Sequence record: NC_042056.1
Length of the DNA stretch: 64,000 nucleotides
Direction: 5' to 3' (one strand)
A program made the translations under genes and the position numbers. Shown one piece after another: positions 1,497 to 6,641 of the stretch; within the stretch, counting starts at the first letter, position 1; the number at the start of each line of letters is the position of its first letter. The notes below the pieces were generated by a model that searched no databases, was not told the origin of the DNA, and saw only the letters and a program-made list of their open reading frames with translations.

Positions 1497-1922
1497 ATGT
1501 TCGGTCTTTTCAAAAAACGCGCTAACCGTGCTATGTCTGAAATCAAAAAATTCGACAAACGTGACCTGGCAGAAGCCGTGGTTAACGCCGCTTACCTGAT
1601 TGCGTACGCGGATGGCGAGCTGGAATCTTCTGAGAAATCGAAAATCGATCAGGTGCTGCGTGCCAACCCGGTACTGTCTAACTTCCAGTCCGAGCTGAAC
1701 ACAATTGCTTCTACAATCATCGCTCAGCTGGAAGCGGACATCGACATCGGTCGTCGTGCTGCCCTGCGCCAGATTGCTGATGTGAAAGGCGACCAGCGCG
1801 AGTGTGAAGACGTTCTGGACGTTGCTGTGGCTATTGCCCGTGCTGATGGCGAAATCGAACCGGCAGAAGTTGAAATGCTGAAACAGATCGCCGAAGCGCT
1901 GGGTCTGCGTTACGACGCGTAA
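1497..1922 (+). CDS. terB: TerB-family (tellurite-resistance-like) protein
   Basis: Motifs LIAYADGELESSE and AIARADGEIEPAEVEMLKQIAEALG. Confidence 0.85.
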   Translation: MFGLFKKRANRAMSEIKKFDKRDLAEAVVNAAYLIAYADGELESSEKSKIDQVLRANPVLSNFQSELNTIASTIIAQLEADIDIGRRAALRQIADVKGDQRECEDVLDVAVAIARADGEIEPAEVEMLKQIAEALGLRYDA

Positions 1923-2174: not shown

Positions 2175-3014
2175 ATGAGAAAGGTGCTTTTCGGAATACT
2201 TGCAGCGTTGACGTTTAGCATGTCCGCAGTCGCGGCAGACGAAGTAGTGATTACCACAGGACAGCAGGGCCTGACCTATAACTCGGTCTATGGCGTTAAT
2301 CTGGCCGGTGCCATCAGCGAGTTCGGTACTCGTGCACGGGTCATCCCGTCGAAGGGGTCGTTAGACAACCTCGATAAAGTTGCCGCCGGTGAAGCCCAGA
2401 TTGGTTTCACGCAGGCAGATGCTTTCCAGTTCTGGCGCGCTAAGCACCCGAACGAAGCGCAGAACGTTGACATCGTCGGTCAGCTGGCCCGTGAATGTGT
2501 CTGGGTCGCTGTCAAGAAAGATGGCAAAGTTAAAGATGCGAAAGATTTAACCGATGGCGTGAAAATCGCAGTCGGTGAACCGGACTCTGGCTCCTACGCC
2601 AGTTGGCAATATCTGCAACAGTTGGTGAAAGAGTATTCCAAAGCGGAAACTTACGCCAAGGGCGGTATCCGTTCGTTGTCCAAAGTGGCAACGGGTGAAT
2701 ACGACGCATTCCTGTGGGTATCTGCGCCGGATAAAAGCAACAAATTCCTCGAAGCGGTCAATCAAGACAGTTCTGGTTTAGAGCTGATTGACATGAGCAC
2801 ATGGAACGTCAACGACAAACTGCCTAACGGCCAGTCTGTGTATACGAAAGAAACGGCCAAGACAGACAAGACCGCGTTCTTCGGTAAGAAAGTTGATGTT
2901 CCGTGCACCACCACACTCGTCGTGGCCAACACTGACGCTGGTGATGATCTGCTCGAAACCGTTTCTACCATCCTCCTGAAAAACAATTCACGAGTGATGG
3001 GGGACAAAAAATAA
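2175..3014 (+). CDS. TAXI-family TRAP solute-binding periplasmic protein
   Basis: Signal peptide plus motifs ITTGQQGLTY, SKGSLDNL, IGFTQAD and IAVGEPDSGS. Confidence 0.8.
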   Translation: MRKVLFGILAALTFSMSAVAADEVVITTGQQGLTYNSVYGVNLAGAISEFGTRARVIPSKGSLDNLDKVAAGEAQIGFTQADAFQFWRAKHPNEAQNVDIVGQLARECVWVAVKKDGKVKDAKDLTDGVKIAVGEPDSGSYASWQYLQQLVKEYSKAETYAKGGIRSLSKVATGEYDAFLWVSAPDKSNKFLEAVNQDSSGLELIDMSTWNVNDKLPNGQSVYTKETAKTDKTAFFGKKVDVPCTTTLVVANTDAGDDLLETVSTILLKNNSRVMGDKK

Positions 3015-3020
3015 AAATAT

Positions 3021-3668
3021 GTACTGACCCAGTGCATCTTTTCGGGCTGGGTAGGGTTAATGTCCCTACCTGCGCGGTGTTCGTTAAGGCTGGTAACGTT
3101 CGCTAAGACCTATCGCATACCCGTAAGTCGATAGCAGCCGGTTACACAAAGAACTATCCATGTGGTAGGTAACCGACCGTTCACGATCTCATTAGGTGAG
3201 CAAATAATCTATGCAAGGACTTCTAGGATTTGTGCTCGACATGATGGGCAGCTTACGCCGCCTCATCAAGCAGTTACGAATCTGGAAGCTTGCCCATTAC
3301 TGGTTTACAGGCGAAAAGGCATCTCGTGAGAGTGTGCCATGCAAACTGCGTATTTACATTAGTATGTTCACTGCGGTGAGCATAGGTCAAGCCCCGGAAC
3401 GATAAGCCGGTCAGCTACGCCTGTAAAATACAATCTGAAAATCATAATGGGATTAAGTTCCCAGATTTGAAAAGGCGACTGTGTGTCGTCGGCGATAACC
3501 CCCCGTCGTGGACTCGGTTATCCCAAAGGTAATGTGAAAGGGGTTGGTGCTTGGAGGCGCTAAGACCGGCGGATACGCTGGCTCAGAAGAAGAAGTCCAT
3601 CAACCCCGTTCTCACCTGAGTAACACCCTTTACAAGGCGTTACTTATATATGCGAAAGCGAGGTGAAC
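3021..3668 (+). ncRNA. putative large (~650 nt) structured ncRNA
   Basis: Intergenic, with more than 12 helices and three nested long-range pairings (see findings). Confidence 0.7.
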
Positions 3669-3995
3669 ATGGGAATGTATCGTGAAGGCCCTGAAAGCAC
3701 GGTGACTCACCGTAATCATGATTACTCTGTGGATGCATTGCTGGATATAGCGGAACGTCATAGCCTCGTTCAAATTCCAGTGTCTAGAATAGAATGGATT
3801 TTAAACGAGACTACGCTCGATGATGAGCGGGTTAAGAATGCAGATACGGATTATCCAATAATCGTGCTGCACGAAGGAAGTTTGTATATTGTATTAGACG
3901 GTGCCCATCGCCTTGCGAAGGCGGTAGCCGAAGGCAAAGACACCATCGCAGCCAAGATATTGGTGCCTGCGAATTTACCGAAACCGGTACGATAA
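3663..3995 (+). CDS. ParB/Srx-like domain protein
   Basis: YPIIV...IVLDGAHRLAKA motif. Start is GTG 3663 or ATG 3669. Confidence 0.75.
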   Translation: MNMGMYREGPESTVTHRNHDYSVDALLDIAERHSLVQIPVSRIEWILNETTLDDERVKNADTDYPIIVLHEGSLYIVLDGAHRLAKAVAEGKDTIAAKILVPANLPKPVR

Positions 3996-4026
3996 AAGTC
4001 TAATTACAAGAATACACTGTATTATG
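3994..4026 (+). promoter_or_regulatory. second copy of the tRNA-cluster promoter
   Basis: 22-nt exact repeat of 826-847 with TATG at 4023-4026. Confidence 0.6.
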
Positions 4027-4113
4027 TCGGAAACCCGATTTGATGTTGCACAGAGCGTTACGCTGCGGCGTTTGCTGGTGTGCAGGGTTAGGTCGGGATT
4101 CTGGCACCTATTT

Positions 4114-4199
4114 GGCGGGTTACTCAAGCGGTCAACGAGAGCAGACTGTAAATCTGTTGCCTTCGGGCTTCGTAGGTTCAAATCCTTCACACGCCACCA
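4114..4199 (+). tRNA. trnY: tRNA-Tyr (GTA)
   Basis: CT-GTA-AA loop, long variable arm and CCA, with one acceptor-stem mismatch. Confidence 0.9.
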
Positions 4200-4205
4200 A
4201 ACAAT

Positions 4206-4425
4206 GGTACCTGTCACAGCAGCCCTTGAGGCTTACGCGATGATGACTGGTCGCCCATTTTACCGGGTAACACATTCCTGCCAGCGCGCTATTGCCGCGA
4301 AGGTTTGCCCCCGGTGTTGTGCGTTATTCGGGTCTACCCACCATCTGCGGATGGTGCGTTGATGTCTCGATATACGCCATAGGGACGCCTTGAGAACTCC
4401 GTGAAATTCGGAGAGGTACCACCCA
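4206..4425 (+). ncRNA. ~220-nt RNA with tRNA-like acceptor stem and T-arm
   Basis: GGTACCT(4206-12)/AGGTACC(4414-20), immediately preceded by CTCCG-TGAAATT-CGGAG; ends ACCCA. Confidence 0.6.
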
Positions 4426-4429
4426 TTCT

Positions 4430-4494
4430 TGTGTTTCCTTATCCTGAAGACATTCCTAAGACAAATTCATTCATGGTCGAGGAAACACAGAACC
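4430..4494 (+). ncRNA. 65-nt stem-loop motif, copy 1
   Basis: 10-bp stem with a 40-nt loop that is conserved with 5563-5629. Confidence 0.65.
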
Positions 4495-4500
4495 TATTCA

Positions 4501-4576
4501 GGTGCTATCGTCTAGTGGCCGAGGATACTACCCTGTCACGGTAGAGACCGGAGTTCGATTCTCCGTAGCACCGCCA
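4501..4576 (+). tRNA. trnD: tRNA-Asp (GTC)
   Basis: Canonical cloverleaf, CT-GTC-AC, CCA. Confidence 0.95.
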
Positions 4577-4584
4577 TTTTCAAA

Positions 4585-4660
4585 TGCGTCTTAGCTCAGT
4601 TGGTAGAGCGCACCCCTGATAAGGGTGAGGCCACTGGTTCAAGTCCAGTAGATGCAACCA
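4585..4660 (+). tRNA. trnI: tRNA-Ile (GAT)
   Basis: Canonical cloverleaf, CT-GAT-AA, CCA. Confidence 0.95.
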
Positions 4661-4667
4661 GTATTGC

Positions 4668-4744
4668 ATTCCCGTCATCTAGTTGGTCCAGGATACGACA
4701 CTTTCACTGTCGGTACACGAGTTCAAATCTCGTCGGGAATACCA
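4668..4744 (+). tRNA. trnE: tRNA-Glu (TTC)
   Basis: Canonical cloverleaf, CT-TTC-AC, CCA. Confidence 0.95.
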
Positions 4745-4749
4745 TTTGT

Positions 4750-4840
4750 AGAGAATTGACTGAGTTGGTTTAAGGTGCTCCCCTGCTAAGGGAGTGTATG
4801 CGAAAGTGTACCATTGGTTCGAATCCAATATTCTCTGCCA
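4750..4840 (+). tRNA. trnS: tRNA-Ser (GCT)
   Basis: CT-GCT-AA, long variable arm, G discriminator, CCA. Confidence 0.95.
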
Positions 4841-4841
4841 T

Positions 4842-5015
4842 GTTCTCTTGCTGTGGGAAATAGAAGCGAACGTAGAAACGCCGGTTAGCTCAAAGCTTAG
4901 AGCGTCTCATCTTCGGATGAGAAGGTTGGGGGCGCAACCCGAAATCCCTATCGGCAACGGCCTGCTTGTCAGGATTAGAAACATCTACGTGGATGGGTAC
5001 TTCTACAGCAAGAAC
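4842..5015 (+). ncRNA. ~175-nt RNA containing a tRNA-like domain with a UUCG-capped anticodon arm
   Basis: 13-bp terminal stem (4846-58/5001-13) and a 7-bp inner stem enclosing a cloverleaf at 4879-4957. Confidence 0.65.
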
Positions 5016-5018
5016 AAA

Positions 5019-5140
5019 ACAGTGGGAGCATTGTCCACTGTGACACCGGCAAAGGTTTCGACCTTGCGGGTTGGGCGGAAGCCCGATGTTCCCCCGAACG
5101 CTGGCCTTCTGGCCAATACAGTGAAAGCTTACCCTTGCCG
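5019..5140 (+). ncRNA. putative structured RNA
   Basis: Several hairpins, two with UUCG and GGAA tetraloops, closed by CGGCAA/TTGCCG. Confidence 0.4.
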
Positions 5141-5221
5141 ATGATCACCTCTTCTGCTGCTGCCAACACACTGTATAACCAGAATCAGTCCTGCCTTAAA
5201 TGGCAAGCGTTCACCCTTTAC

Positions 5222-5299
5222 GTTTCCTCAAGGCGGCTTGGGGTGTTATCTCTCGGCTCTGTTGGGTAACATCGTGGTTCAACTCCATGGGAAACACCA
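5222..5299 (+). tRNA. tRNA-like RNA / pseudo-tRNA without a canonical anticodon loop
   Basis: GTTTCC/GGAAAC acceptor, TTCAACT T-loop and CCA, but a 9-bp arm with a 12-nt loop. Confidence 0.6.
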
Positions 5300-5305
5300 A
5301 ACAAT

Positions 5306-5397
5306 GGCTCCGTAGCTAAATCGGTAGAGGCAGACTTTAATTAGTTCTCCAACGATTTTATAATCGCGTGGTGTAGGTTCAAGTCCTACCGGAGCAA
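5306..5397 (+). pseudogene. degenerate class II (Leu-like) tRNA
   Basis: Acceptor, D-region and T-arm are present. The anticodon arm has a 6-nt TTAATT loop and there is no CCA. Confidence 0.55.
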
Positions 5398-5474
5398 GAG
5401 CACTGCTGTTAAGTTGGTTAACACCCGACCCATACTCGGATATTCGCACGTTCGATTCGTGCCAGTGCTCGCCC
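5398..5474 (+). tRNA. tRNA with CAT anticodon (Met or Ile2), atypical
   Basis: CC-CAT-AC loop (C at 33), 8-bp acceptor pairing, GTTCGAT T-loop; ends GCCC. Confidence 0.7.
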
Positions 5475-5481
5475 TTATTTA

Positions 5482-5557
5482 GACTCTGTAGTTCAGTTGG
5501 TAGAACGGTGGACTGTTAATCCATATGTCGCAGGTTCGAGTCCTGCCAGAGTCGCCA
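5482..5557 (+). tRNA. trnN: tRNA-Asn (GTT)
   Basis: Canonical cloverleaf, CT-GTT-AA, CCA. Confidence 0.95.
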
Positions 5558-5562
5558 CATTT

Positions 5563-5629
5563 TGCATTGCCCGAGTCCCGAATGACATTCCGGAAAAATA
5601 TCATCCATGGTCACGGGCAGTGCAGAACC
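5563..5629 (+). ncRNA. 65-nt stem-loop motif, copy 2
   Basis: 11-bp stem with a different sequence from copy 1 and a conserved 40-nt loop. Confidence 0.65.
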
Positions 5630-5664
5630 AAAATCCCAGCCTTCGCAGAAAAAGCTTACCTGCA

Positions 5665-5784
5665 TTAGCGGTCCCCTGCGGGGGTTGGGTACCACCTTTG
5701 TCCGTTTTGTTTTTTTCTTTCAATTGCCTGGCGGTATTGGTGGGAACAAAACGGGTAAAGCCCTAGCGGGGGAAAAGCCGTTAA
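5665..5784 (+). ncRNA. rod-like structured RNA or 5' leader
   Basis: 16-bp helix 5696-5711/5745-5760 plus outer helices 5665-72/5777-84 and 5673-77/5768-72. Confidence 0.5.
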
Positions 5785-5828
5785 CAACAACAGAAGCAGT
5801 AAAAACAGAAGTAAAAGCAGGAGTAGTT

Positions 5829-6641
5829 ATGTTTACTATCTTACGCAAAATCAATGGTAACCGCACACCAACCGAACACGAATCCCCTACGCTGGGTGAT
5901 ACGAAGTCACAAGTGTTCAAAGATGCGATGTCGCTTCTTACCGAATCCAATAACGTGCATAACTGCATGGATTCTGGGATGGATGCGAAGCCGTGGATTA
6001 ACGGCAAACCCAAACCGATTGAGGAGTGGGTAGAGCGCTTTAAGAAAGCGTACGGCGCGACAGACTCAGACAACCAAGAACTGGTTTCTCTGGTCAGTGA
6101 ACTCGCACCGGGAATGTTTGACAAAGCCAATGCGCGTTTTGCATCGGACTTTGGTCAACTGGAAGAAGCCTTCCTGAAAGATACCGGGCAAACTATCATC
6201 TGGAAATGTCCGAACGGACTCCCGATTGATATCCAGTTCCAAAACATTCCCCGTCAGTCTGTTGAAACACTACATACCACGCTCGATTTCATCGAAGCGG
6301 ATGAGTTGAAGTTTGCGGTGTTCAACAGCAAGGCGTTGTGGGATGGGTATAACTCCGCTGAACTGTTTGGCGGTGAAGCCACCGAGATTTCCTCGGTAGA
6401 ACTCCAACACGTTTACTTTGACGATACGGCCATGCCGCAAGAAGCGGTGCTCAAAGCCAACCGTCGTGGTACCCGCACTATGGAACAGGTCATCGGGGTG
6501 CTTGCTTATGGCAGCTCCGAACAACCCGACCCAACCACAGGCAACGTGCCGGTCACAGTGATGACCTACGAGTTTATCTACCAAGGCGATGAAGTCTACA
6601 TTACGAACCGTCACGGTAAGACCGTGGACTCCATCCGTTAA
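5829..6641 (+). CDS. hypothetical protein
   Basis: AGGAG RBS before ATG 5829. The ORF-track extension to 5607 overlaps structured RNA. Confidence 0.75.
   Translation: MFTILRKINGNRTPTEHESPTLGDTKSQVFKDAMSLLTESNNVHNCMDSGMDAKPWINGKPKPIEEWVERFKKAYGATDSDNQELVSLVSELAPGMFDKANARFASDFGQLEEAFLKDTGQTIIWKCPNGLPIDIQFQNIPRQSVETLHTTLDFIEADELKFAVFNSKALWDGYNSAELFGGEATEISSVELQHVYFDDTAMPQEAVLKANRRGTRTMEQVIGVLAYGSSEQPDPTTGNVPVTVMTYEFIYQGDEVYITNRHGKTVDSIR

What the first reader, a model, noticed from the sequence alone, without database searches (positions are those of the whole stretch)
4206..4425. tmRNA-like architecture without tmRNA identity: 220-nt RNA with a perfect acceptor stem and T-arm
Seen: a 7-bp acceptor (GGTACCT/AGGTACC) stacks on a 5-bp stem with a 7-nt TGAAATT T-loop-type loop, followed by A-CCCA. 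About 180 nt of internal hairpins fill the middle, for example AGCC/GGCT, ACCGGG/CCCGGT and CACCATC-TGCG-GATGGTG. There is no G3:U70 pair, so it is not a standard alanylated tmRNA. Inference: RNase P/RNase Z could process it as a tRNA mimic carrying a large payload domain.
Basis: partly seen in the sequence, partly recalled or inferred. Interest (0 to 1): 0.7.

Follow-up and report, generated by a model that had tools for sequence, protein, structure and literature searches.

The report
tRNA-shaped RNA in phage tRNA cluster
A 220-base gene for a previously undescribed, tRNA-shaped non-coding RNA sits among the tRNA genes of an Erwinia jumbo phage and is conserved, with compensating base changes, in related jumbo phages; it is not a tmRNA and its job is unknown.

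Summary
The window is Erwinia jumbo phage Huxley/Machina (Machinavirus). The feature at 4206-4425 is exactly as described: a perfect 7-bp acceptor stem stacked on a 5-bp/7-nt-loop T arm, then A-CC-CA, with 184 nt of hairpins in between. It lies unannotated between tRNA-Tyr and tRNA-Asp.

The shape alone is weak evidence, since about 5 relaxed look-alikes occur per shuffled window. Comparison shows it is real. I found 15 distinct homologues in at least six jumbo-phage lineages. These are a 217-221-nt "long form" in Machinavirus and 119-157-nt "short forms" elsewhere.

A covariance model built only from short forms finds 4206-4425 end to end (54 bits, E about 1e-10). Core pairs are 94.8% kept, and 10 of 23 show changes on both sides (0 of 500 shuffles).

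The fold is a tRNA-like four-way junction. The D arm and the anticodon arm are replaced by variable, mosaic hairpins. G1:C72, the T arm, the first helix of the large central arm (P3) and C74-C75 never change, and A76 is never encoded.

ARAGORN and Rfam find nothing, and there is no G3:U70 and no conserved ORF, so it is not a tmRNA.

Best reading: a stable tRNA-mimic RNA cut out of the tRNA precursor by RNase P. The closest analogue is T4 species 1 RNA (rnaC). Expression, mature ends and function are not shown.

The parts
4201..4205 (+). Conserved 5' leader ACAAU; U at -1 is the predicted RNase P cleavage context.
   Evidence: ACAA(U/C) directly precedes all 15 family members whatever lies upstream: a tRNA, another tRNA-like RNA or a CDS. 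Position -1 is U in 13 of 15 and C in 2 of 15.
4206..4212 (+). Acceptor stem, 5' strand (GGUACCU).
   Evidence: Perfect 7 bp with 4414-4420. Across the family 4 of 7 pairs change on both sides, and G1:C72 is invariant.
4213..4247 (+). P2 hairpin, in the place of the D arm. The base is GUCA/UGAC and the inner helix is AGCC/GGCU.
   Evidence: Predicted by the alignment fold. The three base pairs of P2 all covary across the family (GUCA/UGAC, GUCU/AGAC, UCCC/GGGA). The body of P2 comes in three unrelated types.
4248..4248 (+). Single-U linker between P2 and P3, analogous to tRNA position 26.
   Evidence: The YUGG motif is invariant in all members.
4249..4256 (+). P3, 5' strand (GGUCGCCC). P3 is the helix in the place of the anticodon stem.
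   Evidence: Pairs with 4382-4389. The family consensus is GGCAGCC/GCAGCC with a central mismatch, 96% of cells paired.
4257..4381 (+). Payload, long form only. Two long hairpins branch from P3: hairpin A 4262-4315 and hairpin B 4319-4378, with the apical CACCAUC-UGCG-GAUGGUG at 4339-4356.
   Evidence: Structure: 98.2% of cells paired among 5 long forms, with two compensatory pairs in the apical hairpin (C:G/G:U, A:U/G:C/C:G). Other genera carry unrelated 28-59-nt inserts in this position.
4382..4389 (+). P3, 3' strand (GGGACGCC).
4390..4396 (+). Junction UUGAGAA between P3 and the T arm, analogous to the variable loop.
   Evidence: Conserved as UU(G/U)AGAA in most members; variants are UUAGAA, GUAUAA and UUUAUAA.
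4397..4413 (+). T arm: CUCCG, loop UGAAAUU, CGGAG.
   Evidence: The stem is invariant in 15 of 15. The loop is always U-G-N-R-A-U-U. From my own knowledge, that keeps the U1/A5 pair and the purine at position 4 of the T-loop motif, but lacks the U55-C56 of real tRNAs.
4414..4420 (+). Acceptor stem, 3' strand (AGGUACC).
4421..4425 (+). 3' tail: A73, C74, C75, then C and A. There is no encoded A76.
   Evidence: CC at positions 74-75 is invariant. Position 73 is A in 14 of 15 and U in Moabite. Position 76 is C or U and never A. Position 77 is A or U. Seven tRNAs of the cluster read here encode a full CCA (Trp, Cys, Tyr, Asp, Ile-GAU, Glu, Ser).

Best explanation
Window 4206-4425 (+ strand) is a gene for a tRNA-shaped, non-coding stable RNA. 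It belongs to a family, undescribed as far as I could find, that lives in or beside the tRNA clusters of the Erwinia/Salmonella/Serratia jumbo phages of the SPN3US / phiEaH2 / Machina group.

Shown by sequence and comparison:
- A seven-pair acceptor stem stacks on a five-pair T arm.
- These close a four-way junction whose other two arms stand where the D arm and the anticodon arm of a tRNA would be. They are P2, and P3 carrying the payload.
- The core is under purifying selection as RNA on the + strand.
- The distal parts of both extra arms vary greatly and are mosaic between phages.

Inferred mechanism:
1. The RNA is co-transcribed with the neighbouring tRNAs.
2. Host RNase P cuts between U4205 and G4206. 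It would use the 12-bp acceptor/T stack, G1:C72 and the N73-C74-C75 tail.
3. The 3' side is trimmed back to about 4421-4423, possibly with A added by the CCA-adding enzyme.
4. The tRNA-like half therefore acts as a processing and stability handle, a natural version of the tRNA scaffold used in the laboratory to express recombinant RNAs.

The invariant block, that is the P3 base, the purine-rich junction and the sequence-invariant T arm, is most likely a binding platform for a protein that reads tRNA shape.

The RNA is probably not aminoacylated and does not act in trans-translation. Its downstream function is unknown.
For: Identity and context: the region is 100% identical to phages Huxley and Machina. 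The element lies unannotated between tRNA-Tyr and tRNA-Asp on the tRNA strand.

Family: there are 15 distinct homologues, in Machinavirus, Wellingtonvirus, phiEaH2/Stratton, Erskinevirus, Seoulvirus (SPAsTU, pEa_SNUABM_29) and Moabitevirus.

Homology and boundaries: model R1 was built from 10 short forms only. It matches the window at 4206-4425 over all 148 model positions, at 54.2 bits and E = 1e-10, and matches nothing else in the window. Flanks differ in at least 7 upstream and 6 downstream contexts, and conservation stops at ACAAY|G1 and at N77.

Structure: 94.8% of core cells are paired. Ten of 23 pairs show changes on both sides. None of 500 shuffles reach this, and slid controls give 36-51%. 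Among long forms, 98.2% of cells are paired, with compensatory changes in the apical hairpin.

Strand: G:U pairs sit at covarying positions. They would be A.C mismatches on the other strand.

Non-coding: the only long ORF (4024-4362) also runs through tRNA-Tyr. It is broken by 1-2-nt indels in relatives.

RNase P determinants: G1:C72 is kept in 15 of 15, C74-C75 in 15 of 15, the 7+5 bp stack in all, and U-1 in 13 of 15. These are the contacts described for bacterial RNase P: the RCCA-RPR pairing of D73/C74/C75, the 12-bp measuring device and the A248/N-1 contact. That review also lists non-tRNA phage substrates M3 and C4 RNA (PMC11143913).

Against charging: the acceptor pairs and the discriminator change freely and A76 is never encoded.

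Analogue: T4 rnaC folds the same way, with an acceptor-like stem abutting a T arm and two hairpins in between.
Against: - There is no direct evidence of transcription, of mature ends or of stability. The wastewater "RNA-Seq" contigs cover the phage patchily at low depth and may be DNA. In one run a 165-nt contig ends at 4421 and the next starts at 4424, at 4-8 times the depth of neighbouring pieces, but contig breaks are not RNA ends.
- The T loop lacks U55-C56, and the long P2 cannot form a normal D-loop/T-loop elbow. Recognition by the RNase P specificity domain could therefore be weaker than for a tRNA.
- Covariation rests on few independent lineages, and alignment A8 was fitted to the model's structure.
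- The sequence invariance of the T arm and P3 gives no covariation support for those two helices.
- No partner protein or target was identified. Neighbouring genes have no tRNA-related domains.
Confidence: 0.6

Rival explanations
1. It is a purely cis-acting punctuation element, like the t-elements of plant mitochondria. On this view the tRNA-like fold exists only to direct RNase P and 3' processing, so that neighbouring tRNAs or mRNAs are released. The excised RNA has no function of its own.
For: It always sits at a boundary between transcription-unit modules behind a conserved ACAAY spacer. In pEa_SNUABM_29 it directly follows a CDS rather than a tRNA. The distal arms vary greatly, as expected if only the processing handle matters. 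The same cluster holds several other tRNA-like non-tRNAs.
Against: In most genomes it lies between two genuine tRNAs, which already supply RNase P sites. P3, the junction and the T-arm sequence are invariant across genera and P4 covaries. That is more constraint than a cleavage signal needs. There is exactly one copy per genome, rather than one at every boundary.
Confidence: 0.15
2. It is a decaying tRNA gene, a pseudogene that acquired insertions and persists by hitch-hiking in the cluster.
For: It has a tRNA-like topology and lies in a tRNA cluster where tRNA content turns over quickly between relatives. Other aberrant tRNA-like sequences lie nearby.
Against: It is conserved across at least six lineages whose genomes are otherwise about 64-70% identical (PMC7823757). 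Compensatory changes keep four helices paired. No member retains a D loop or an anticodon loop. The tail is uniformly NCC without A76, which is not random decay.
Confidence: 0.07
3. It is a tmRNA-like or otherwise aminoacylated RNA that enters the ribosome, as a reduced trans-translation or tagging RNA.
For: It has an acceptor stem plus T arm with a large insert, and a tail from which CCA could be completed. Several short forms have a tiny frame ending in UAA after a conserved AAUAAA.
Against: ARAGORN, which includes tmRNA detection, finds nothing. Rfam finds nothing even at E up to 10. Pair 3:70 is U:A in long forms and C:G in short forms, never G:U. The T loop is UGNRAUU, not the canonical T loop. 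The fold is a four-way junction rather than a tmRNA fold. The mini-frames are not conserved in the window's form or across subtypes. The acceptor pairs and the discriminator vary, so no aminoacyl-tRNA synthetase identity set is conserved, and A76 is never encoded.
Confidence: 0.03
4. It is a DNA-level signal, such as a promoter, terminator, protein-binding site or recombination site, or a small protein-coding gene.
For: GGTACC in each acceptor strand is a palindrome. A ParB-like gene lies 200 nt upstream. An ORF of 112 codons overlaps the element.
Against: Promoter-like and terminator-like sites are no more frequent than in shuffles, and none lies on the + strand within the element. Short forms have non-palindromic acceptor strands (GACAC.../...GUGUC). 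G:U pairs mark a single-stranded + strand RNA. The ORF is frame-shifted in relatives and spans tRNA-Tyr. The ParB-like neighbour is present only in Machinavirus contexts.
Confidence: 0.03

Closest known systems
Phage T4 species 1 RNA (rnaC), and more loosely species 2 RNA (rnaD)
   Same: Both are encoded inside a phage tRNA cluster on the tRNA strand. Both have a 7-pair acceptor-like stem directly abutting a 5-bp/7-nt T arm, with two hairpins in place of the D and anticodon arms, so both are cloverleaf-like four-way junctions. Neither has an anticodon and neither encodes a full CCA. The function of rnaC is unknown; the T4 record calls it only "small, stable RNA".
   Different: There is no sequence similarity, and model R1 does not hit the T4 region. 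T4 rnaC has a canonical UUCGAAU T loop, two U.U mismatches in its acceptor stem and a UA tail. The element here has a UGNRAUU loop, a perfect stem and an NCC tail. Its "anticodon" arm is far larger, at 141 nt (P3 plus payload). Its arms are swapped between relatives.
tmRNA (ssrA)
   Same: Both have an acceptor stem plus T arm closed by the two ends of the RNA, with a large insert. Both are RNase P substrates or predicted substrates.
   Different: The element has no G3:U70, no conserved tag frame and no canonical T loop. It has a D-arm-position hairpin, which gives a four-way junction. Neither ARAGORN nor Rfam detects it.
Canonical tRNA (Rfam RF00005)
   Same: Both have a 7+5 bp acceptor/T stack, a four-way junction with short linkers (0, 1, 7 and 0 nt here against 2, 1, 4-5 and 0 in tRNA), G1:C72 and a discriminator followed by CC. 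Both are co-oriented in a tRNA operon.
   Different: The element has no D loop, no anticodon loop, no U55-C56 and no encoded A76. It is 220 nt long. It gives no RF00005 hit even at E up to 10.
Other non-tRNA RNase P substrates of phages (phi80 M3 RNA, P1/P7 C4 antisense RNA) and engineered "tRNA scaffold" RNAs
   Same: All use a tRNA-like acceptor region to get a defined 5' end from host RNase P (PMC11143913). In the engineered scaffold the cargo replaces the anticodon arm, as the payload does here.
   Different: C4 acts by antisense pairing to a known target, and no target is known here. Scaffold RNAs are artificial. Homology was not tested for M3 or C4, because their sequences were not fetched.
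Bacterial and phage Y-RNA-like YrlA (partner of Ro60/Rsr)
   Same: Both are tRNA-mimicking non-coding RNAs, and YrlA is often encoded near tRNAs in phages.
   Different: In YrlA the RNA ends form the Ro-binding stem and the tRNA-like part is internal (from my own knowledge). The Rfam YrlA model gives only weak hits on real tRNAs here and none on the element. [quoted passage not shown] I did not establish which group this phage belongs to.

Membership tests
tmRNA | G3:U70 alanine identity pair in the acceptor stem | tested here: not met
   Pair 3:70 is U:A in the 5 long forms and C:G in the 10 short forms.
tmRNA | Recognised by tmRNA detectors (ARAGORN; Rfam tmRNA models in clan CL00001) | tested here: not met
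   ARAGORN finds 9 tRNAs and no tmRNA in the window. Rfam gives no hit at the gathering score or at E up to 10 on 4206-4425.
tmRNA | Conserved tag reading frame with a resume codon and a stop | tested here: not met
   No frame is conserved. Relatives differ by 1-2-nt indels in the only long frame. The mini-frames in short forms differ in length and are absent from the long form.
tRNA (RF00005) | D arm with a GG loop, a 7-nt anticodon loop and a T loop with U54-U55-C56 | tested here: not met
   P2 and P3 replace both arms. The T loop is UGNRAUU. The tRNA model gives no match in 4206-4425.
tRNA (RF00005) | 7-bp acceptor stem stacked on a 5-bp T stem, then discriminator and CC | tested here: met
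T4 species 1 RNA (rnaC)-type tRNA-cluster stable RNA | Encoded in a phage tRNA cluster, with an acceptor-like stem abutting a T arm and no anticodon | tested here: met
   Context. Architecture of the element, and of T4 rnaC.
T4 species 1 RNA (rnaC)-type tRNA-cluster stable RNA | Sequence or profile homology to T4 rnaC | tested here: not met
   Model R1 gives no hit on the T4 tRNA region L151. The blastn searches of the phage collection returned no T4-like record.
T4 species 1 RNA (rnaC)-type tRNA-cluster stable RNA | Accumulates as a discrete stable RNA whose 5' end is made by RNase P | not testable with these tools
   Only metagenomic contigs were available, and they are inconclusive.
Bacterial RNase P substrate | G+1:C72, 12-bp acceptor+T stack, N73-C74-C75 free to pair with the P15 loop, and U preferred at -1 | tested here: met
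   All are present in the window and kept across the family. The determinants are as described in PMC11143913. Actual cleavage was not tested.
YrlA / Y RNA-like | Match to the Rfam YrlA model (RF02553), with a Ro-binding stem formed by the RNA ends | tested here: not met
   The only YrlA hits lie on genuine tRNAs at 15-26 bits against a gathering score of 69. Here the ends form the acceptor stem.
YrlA / Y RNA-like | A Ro60/TROVE protein encoded by the same genome | not tested
   Only ten ORFs near the element were scanned, and none carries TROVE. The rest of the 241-kb genome was not scanned.

The most novel reading that the evidence does not exclude
This may be a natural "tRNA scaffold" family. 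A constant tRNA-top-half core, with the P3 base, junction and T arm as an invariant platform, carries arms that are swapped between phages like cassettes. The mature RNA would work in trans as a shape mimic. It would titrate or recruit a factor that reads the acceptor/T half of tRNAs, for example a host defence nuclease or transferase aimed at tRNA acceptor ends, or a phage-encoded partner protein. The variable arms would tune host or partner specificity. If so, the 50-year-old puzzle of what T4 species 1/2-type RNAs do would gain a comparative and genetic handle.
Probability: 0.2. Interest if true: 0.8.

Novelty: new variant of a known kind. Interest (0 to 1): 0.55.

Why it matters
Phage tRNA clusters have long been known to hold "extra" stable RNAs, such as T4 species 1 and 2, whose function has never been found. 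Here is an unrelated, larger family of the same kind. It has enough natural variation (15 variants in at least six jumbo-phage lineages) to say which parts are selected: the tRNA-like core, the P3 base, the junction and the NCC tail. The arms are free to vary.

That turns a curiosity into something testable by deletion and arm-swap genetics, and by pull-downs in a tractable Erwinia or Salmonella phage system.

There is also a practical point. Genome records leave the element blank, or in Moabite call a protein over it. Neither Rfam release 15 nor ARAGORN recognises it, so annotation pipelines miss it.

Tried and rejected
- **Rfam and ARAGORN.** Rfam at the gathering score and at E up to 10, and ARAGORN with tmRNA detection, gave nothing on the element.
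- **E. coli genomes.** blastn of the element against all complete E. coli genomes gave no match, so it does not copy a host RNA.
- **Bacterial and archaeal genomes.** A scan with the T-arm pattern gave three chance hits without the rest of the fold. A metagenome scan gave only the same phages plus chance hits.
- **Non-specific pattern.** The 14-base pattern TGGCAGCCAATAAA returned more than 119 unrelated contigs. Some of those loci served only as background for the model search.
- **ParB-like neighbour.** Using it to fetch related loci gave two loci. The second, L019, has no copy of the element.
- **Sequencing runs.** Four runs were laid on 3000-6500. They gave scattered low-depth contigs, probably phage DNA. 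They show no usable ends and no clear enrichment, except a 4-8-fold higher depth over 4257-4502 in one run.
- **Complex prediction.** A prediction with E. coli CCA-adding enzyme was not folded by the tool. It is no evidence either way.
- **Short-form structure.** The alignment fold of the short forms gave an alternative pairing of the 3' GCAGCC with GGGCG inside the insert. I preferred P3 (GGCAGCC/GCAGCC), because it is shared with the long forms and with Moabite, SPAsTU and pEa_SNUABM_29, whose inserts lack that partner. The inner structure of the short-form insert remains unresolved.
- **Promoter and terminator scan.** Nothing above chance.
- **Neighbouring proteins.** Pfam finds a TerB-domain protein and an NMT1-like protein, and nothing related to tRNA.
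- **Literature.** Searches found no description of this element.

Full report
**What the window is.** Positions 3600-5700 are 100% identical to Erwinia phages vB_EamM_Huxley and Machina. These are about 241-kb jumbo phages of the genus Machinavirus. The finding lies in their tRNA cluster, between tRNA-Tyr (4114-4199) and tRNA-Asp (4501-4576). It is on the same strand as all the tRNAs. No feature is annotated there in the Huxley record, and the blastn tables list none under the match in Machina, Parshik or the pEa_SNUABM relatives.

**The observation.**
- GGTACCT (4206-4212) pairs perfectly with AGGTACC (4414-4420).
- The 3' strand directly follows a 5-bp stem, CTCCG/CGGAG, with the 7-nt loop TGAAATT (4397-4413).
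- The tail is A-CC-CA (4421-4425).
- The three named internal hairpins are there, and pair 3:70 is U:A.

The unconstrained minimum-free-energy fold keeps the acceptor stem and T arm (z = -2.5).

The bare pattern is not rare. A relaxed search for "7-bp stem, 5-bp/7-nt hairpin, NCC" gives about 4.9 hits per shuffled 64-kb window on both strands. The case therefore has to rest on comparison.

**Relatives.** blastn and pattern scans found the element in the following phages.
- All close Machinavirus genomes, at 92-100% identity.
- Shorter, diverged forms in Wellington, Kwan and pEa_SNUABM_11; phiEaH2 and Stratton; Asesino; SPAsTU and pEa_SNUABM_29; Serratia phages Moabite and Yaphecito.
- Several uncultivated viral and metagenomic contigs of the same phage group.

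This gives 15 distinct sequences: five "long forms" of 217-221 nt and ten "short forms" of 119-157 nt.

Nothing like it was found in 185,579 bacterial and archaeal genomes with the T-arm pattern. Nothing was found in E. coli genomes by blastn.

A covariance model built from the ten short forms only recovers the window's element over its full length. The coordinates are exactly 4206-4425, at 54.2 bits and E about 1e-10. It found nothing else in the window. It also found nothing in Caitlin (L007), in another 237-kb relative (L019) or in the T4 tRNA region. The only hits among the unrelated contigs were weak ones (15-21.5 bits, E 0.01-0.4) on the T-arm-pattern loci I had fetched myself.

**Boundaries.** The element follows tRNA-Tyr, tRNA-Gln, tRNA-Glu, tRNA-Ser, two other tRNA-like RNAs, a CDS or unrelated sequence, depending on the phage. 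It is followed by at least six different sequences. What is constant is ACAA(U/C) immediately before G1, and the tail N73-C-C-(C/U)-(A/U).

**Fold.** The acceptor stem (7 bp) is followed, with no linker, by hairpin P2 (4213-4247). Then come a single U and helix P3 (4249-4256 with 4382-4389), which carries the insert. A 7-nt purine-rich junction (UUGAGAA) follows, then the T arm, then the acceptor 3' strand. This is a four-way junction with tRNA-like linker lengths. P2 stands where the D arm would be, and P3 stands where the anticodon stem would be.

On the 15-sequence alignment:
- 94.8% of cells are paired.
- 10 of 23 core pairs show changes on both sides: acceptor 4 of 7, P2 base 3 of 3, P4 3 of 3.
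- None of 500 column shuffles reaches the observed values.
- Sliding the partners by 1-3 columns drops pairing to 36-51%.

Two caveats apply. The alignment was fitted to the model, and the lineages are few.

Among the long forms, the 66-pair structure is 98.2% paired. The apical hairpin at 4339-4356 shows compensatory changes (C:G to G:U; A:U to G:C or C:G). G:U pairs at variable positions mark the + strand as the folded strand.

**What is constant and what is free.** Invariant in all 15 are:
- G1:C72;
- the T-stem sequence;
- the T-loop pattern U-G-N-R-A-U-U;
- the U linker, that is the YUGG motif (the P3 5' strand has a 1-nt insertion in SPAsTU);
- the GCC that ends the P3 3' strand;
- C74-C75.

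Position 76 is C or U and never A, whereas seven tRNAs of the cluster read here carry a full CCA.

In contrast, the acceptor pairs, the discriminator (U in Moabite), the body of P2 and everything distal to P3/P4 vary. P2 comes in three unrelated types. The insert comes in five types, of 28, 30, 57, 59 and about 127 nt. The types are combined mosaically. Wellington and Moabite share a 90%-identical P2 but have different inserts. Wellington, pEa_SNUABM_11 and phiEaH2 share an insert but have three different P2 types.

**Not coding, not a DNA signal.** The only long ORF over the element (4024-4362) also runs through tRNA-Tyr. It is frame-shifted by 1-2-nt indels in close relatives. Promoter-like and terminator-like sites are at chance level.

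**Not a tmRNA, tRNA or Y RNA.**
- ARAGORN and Rfam, at the gathering score and at E up to 10, find nothing.
- G3:U70 is absent in every member.
- There is no conserved tag frame.
- The fold has a D-position arm.
- The Rfam YrlA model hits only real tRNAs, and weakly.

**Mechanism, and what is inferred.** The conserved features are the ones bacterial RNase P reads. These are the 12-bp acceptor/T stack used as a measuring device, G+1:C72 with the base at -1 (the A248/N-1 contact), and pairing of D73-C74-C75 with G292-G293-U294 of the P15 loop. The source is PMC11143913, read, which also lists phage M3 and C4 RNAs, tmRNA and 4.5S RNA as non-tRNA substrates.

C74-C75 are invariant while A76 is never encoded, and the acceptor identity positions drift. 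I read this as selection for processing and shape, not for aminoacylation. That reading is an inference.

My proposal is therefore as follows.
1. The element is co-transcribed with the tRNAs.
2. RNase P cleaves at U4205/G4206.
3. The 3' end is trimmed to about 4421-4423.
4. A stable tRNA-shaped RNA results, whose invariant P3-junction-T-arm block is a binding platform.

Expression itself is not shown. The wastewater runs hold scattered pieces of a Machinavirus at low depth. In one run, contigs over 4257-4421 and 4424-4502 have 4-8 times the depth of neighbouring pieces, and the break falls at the predicted 3' end. However, contigs have no direction, they break at variants, and the libraries may contain DNA.

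**Comparison with known RNAs.** The nearest known thing is T4 species 1 RNA (rnaC). It lies in the T4 tRNA cluster. It has a 7-position acceptor-like stem directly against a canonical T arm, with two hairpins in between. It shows no sequence or profile similarity to the element, and its function is still unknown.

The element is thus a new, larger variant of the "tRNA-cluster stable RNA" kind. It has a perfect acceptor stem, an NCC tail, a non-canonical T loop and cassette-like arms. I found no description of it in the searchable literature.

**Verdict.**
- It is a real, conserved, undescribed structured RNA of unknown function.

Noticed in passing
window 4424-4500: The 3' trailer of the element folds into a long hairpin, GUGUUUCCU...AGGAAACAC (z = -3.1). 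It is a separate module. About 80% identical copies lie next to tRNA-Asn or in unannotated sequence in Asesino, Caitlin and pEa_SNUABM_4/8/9/29, without the element (hits H41-H48).
   Followed up: partly
window 4880-4957: This is a cloverleaf-like sequence with an acceptor stem, a D-like arm and a 7-bp "anticodon" stem capped by a UUCG tetraloop, so it has no anticodon. It lies inside the annotated hypothetical protein gp17 (window 4848-5144), which may therefore not be a real gene.
   Followed up: partly
window 5096-5217: A second family of tRNA-like RNA. It has a perfect 7-bp acceptor stem, GAACGCT/AGCGTTC, a short T-like hairpin and the tail ACCCU. Homologues with a covarying acceptor stem lie next to the main element in L012/L013 and L005.
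   Followed up: partly
window 5222-5299: A tRNA-sized sequence with a canonical T arm (CGUGG-UUCAACU-CCAUG), a GUUUCC/GGAAAC acceptor stem and the tail A-CCA. Neither ARAGORN nor Rfam calls it.
   Followed up: no
window 5399-5470 and 5305-5398: Rfam scores 5399-5470 as a tRNA (38.9 bits, above the gathering score) in the sensitive search. ARAGORN, the fast Rfam search and the GenBank record all miss it. The adjacent "tRNA-Ile(aat)" is 94 nt long and barely passes (31 bits). It looks like a tRNA with an insertion.
   Followed up: no
L003:1335-1417 (pEa_SNUABM_6); also L143 and L016: An 83-nt mini tRNA-like RNA. It has the acceptor stem GGAAGUA/UGCUUCC, a 4-bp T-like hairpin and the tail A-CCA. 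In some Machinavirus genomes it is inserted between tRNA-Gln and the main element.
   Followed up: no
L002:1101-1250, L005:1125-1250; downstream of the element in L008, L011 and L012: Another conserved spacer module of about 130 nt, containing CAGGGCGAAGCAAUCCUGA. It recurs between tRNAs in several genera.
   Followed up: no
L154:573-695 (Serratia phage Moabite): The Moabite copy of the element (591-716) is annotated as a 40-codon hypothetical protein with a ribosome-binding site (CPT_Moabite_078). This is probably a mis-annotation.
   Followed up: partly
window 4219-4231 versus 4385-4396: The P2 loop region (GCAGCC-CUUGAG) nearly repeats the P3-3'/junction motif (ACGCC-UUGAGAA). The same duplication is seen in SPAsTU, pEa_SNUABM_29 and phiEaH2. 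It could be a twofold binding motif or an internal duplication.
   Followed up: no
window 1497-1919 and 2175-3011: Upstream genes encode a TerB-domain protein (E = 1e-16) and an NMT1-like / periplasmic-binding-like protein (E = 4e-16). The "ParB-like" gp11 (3663-3995) has no Pfam hit at E up to 0.01.
   Followed up: no
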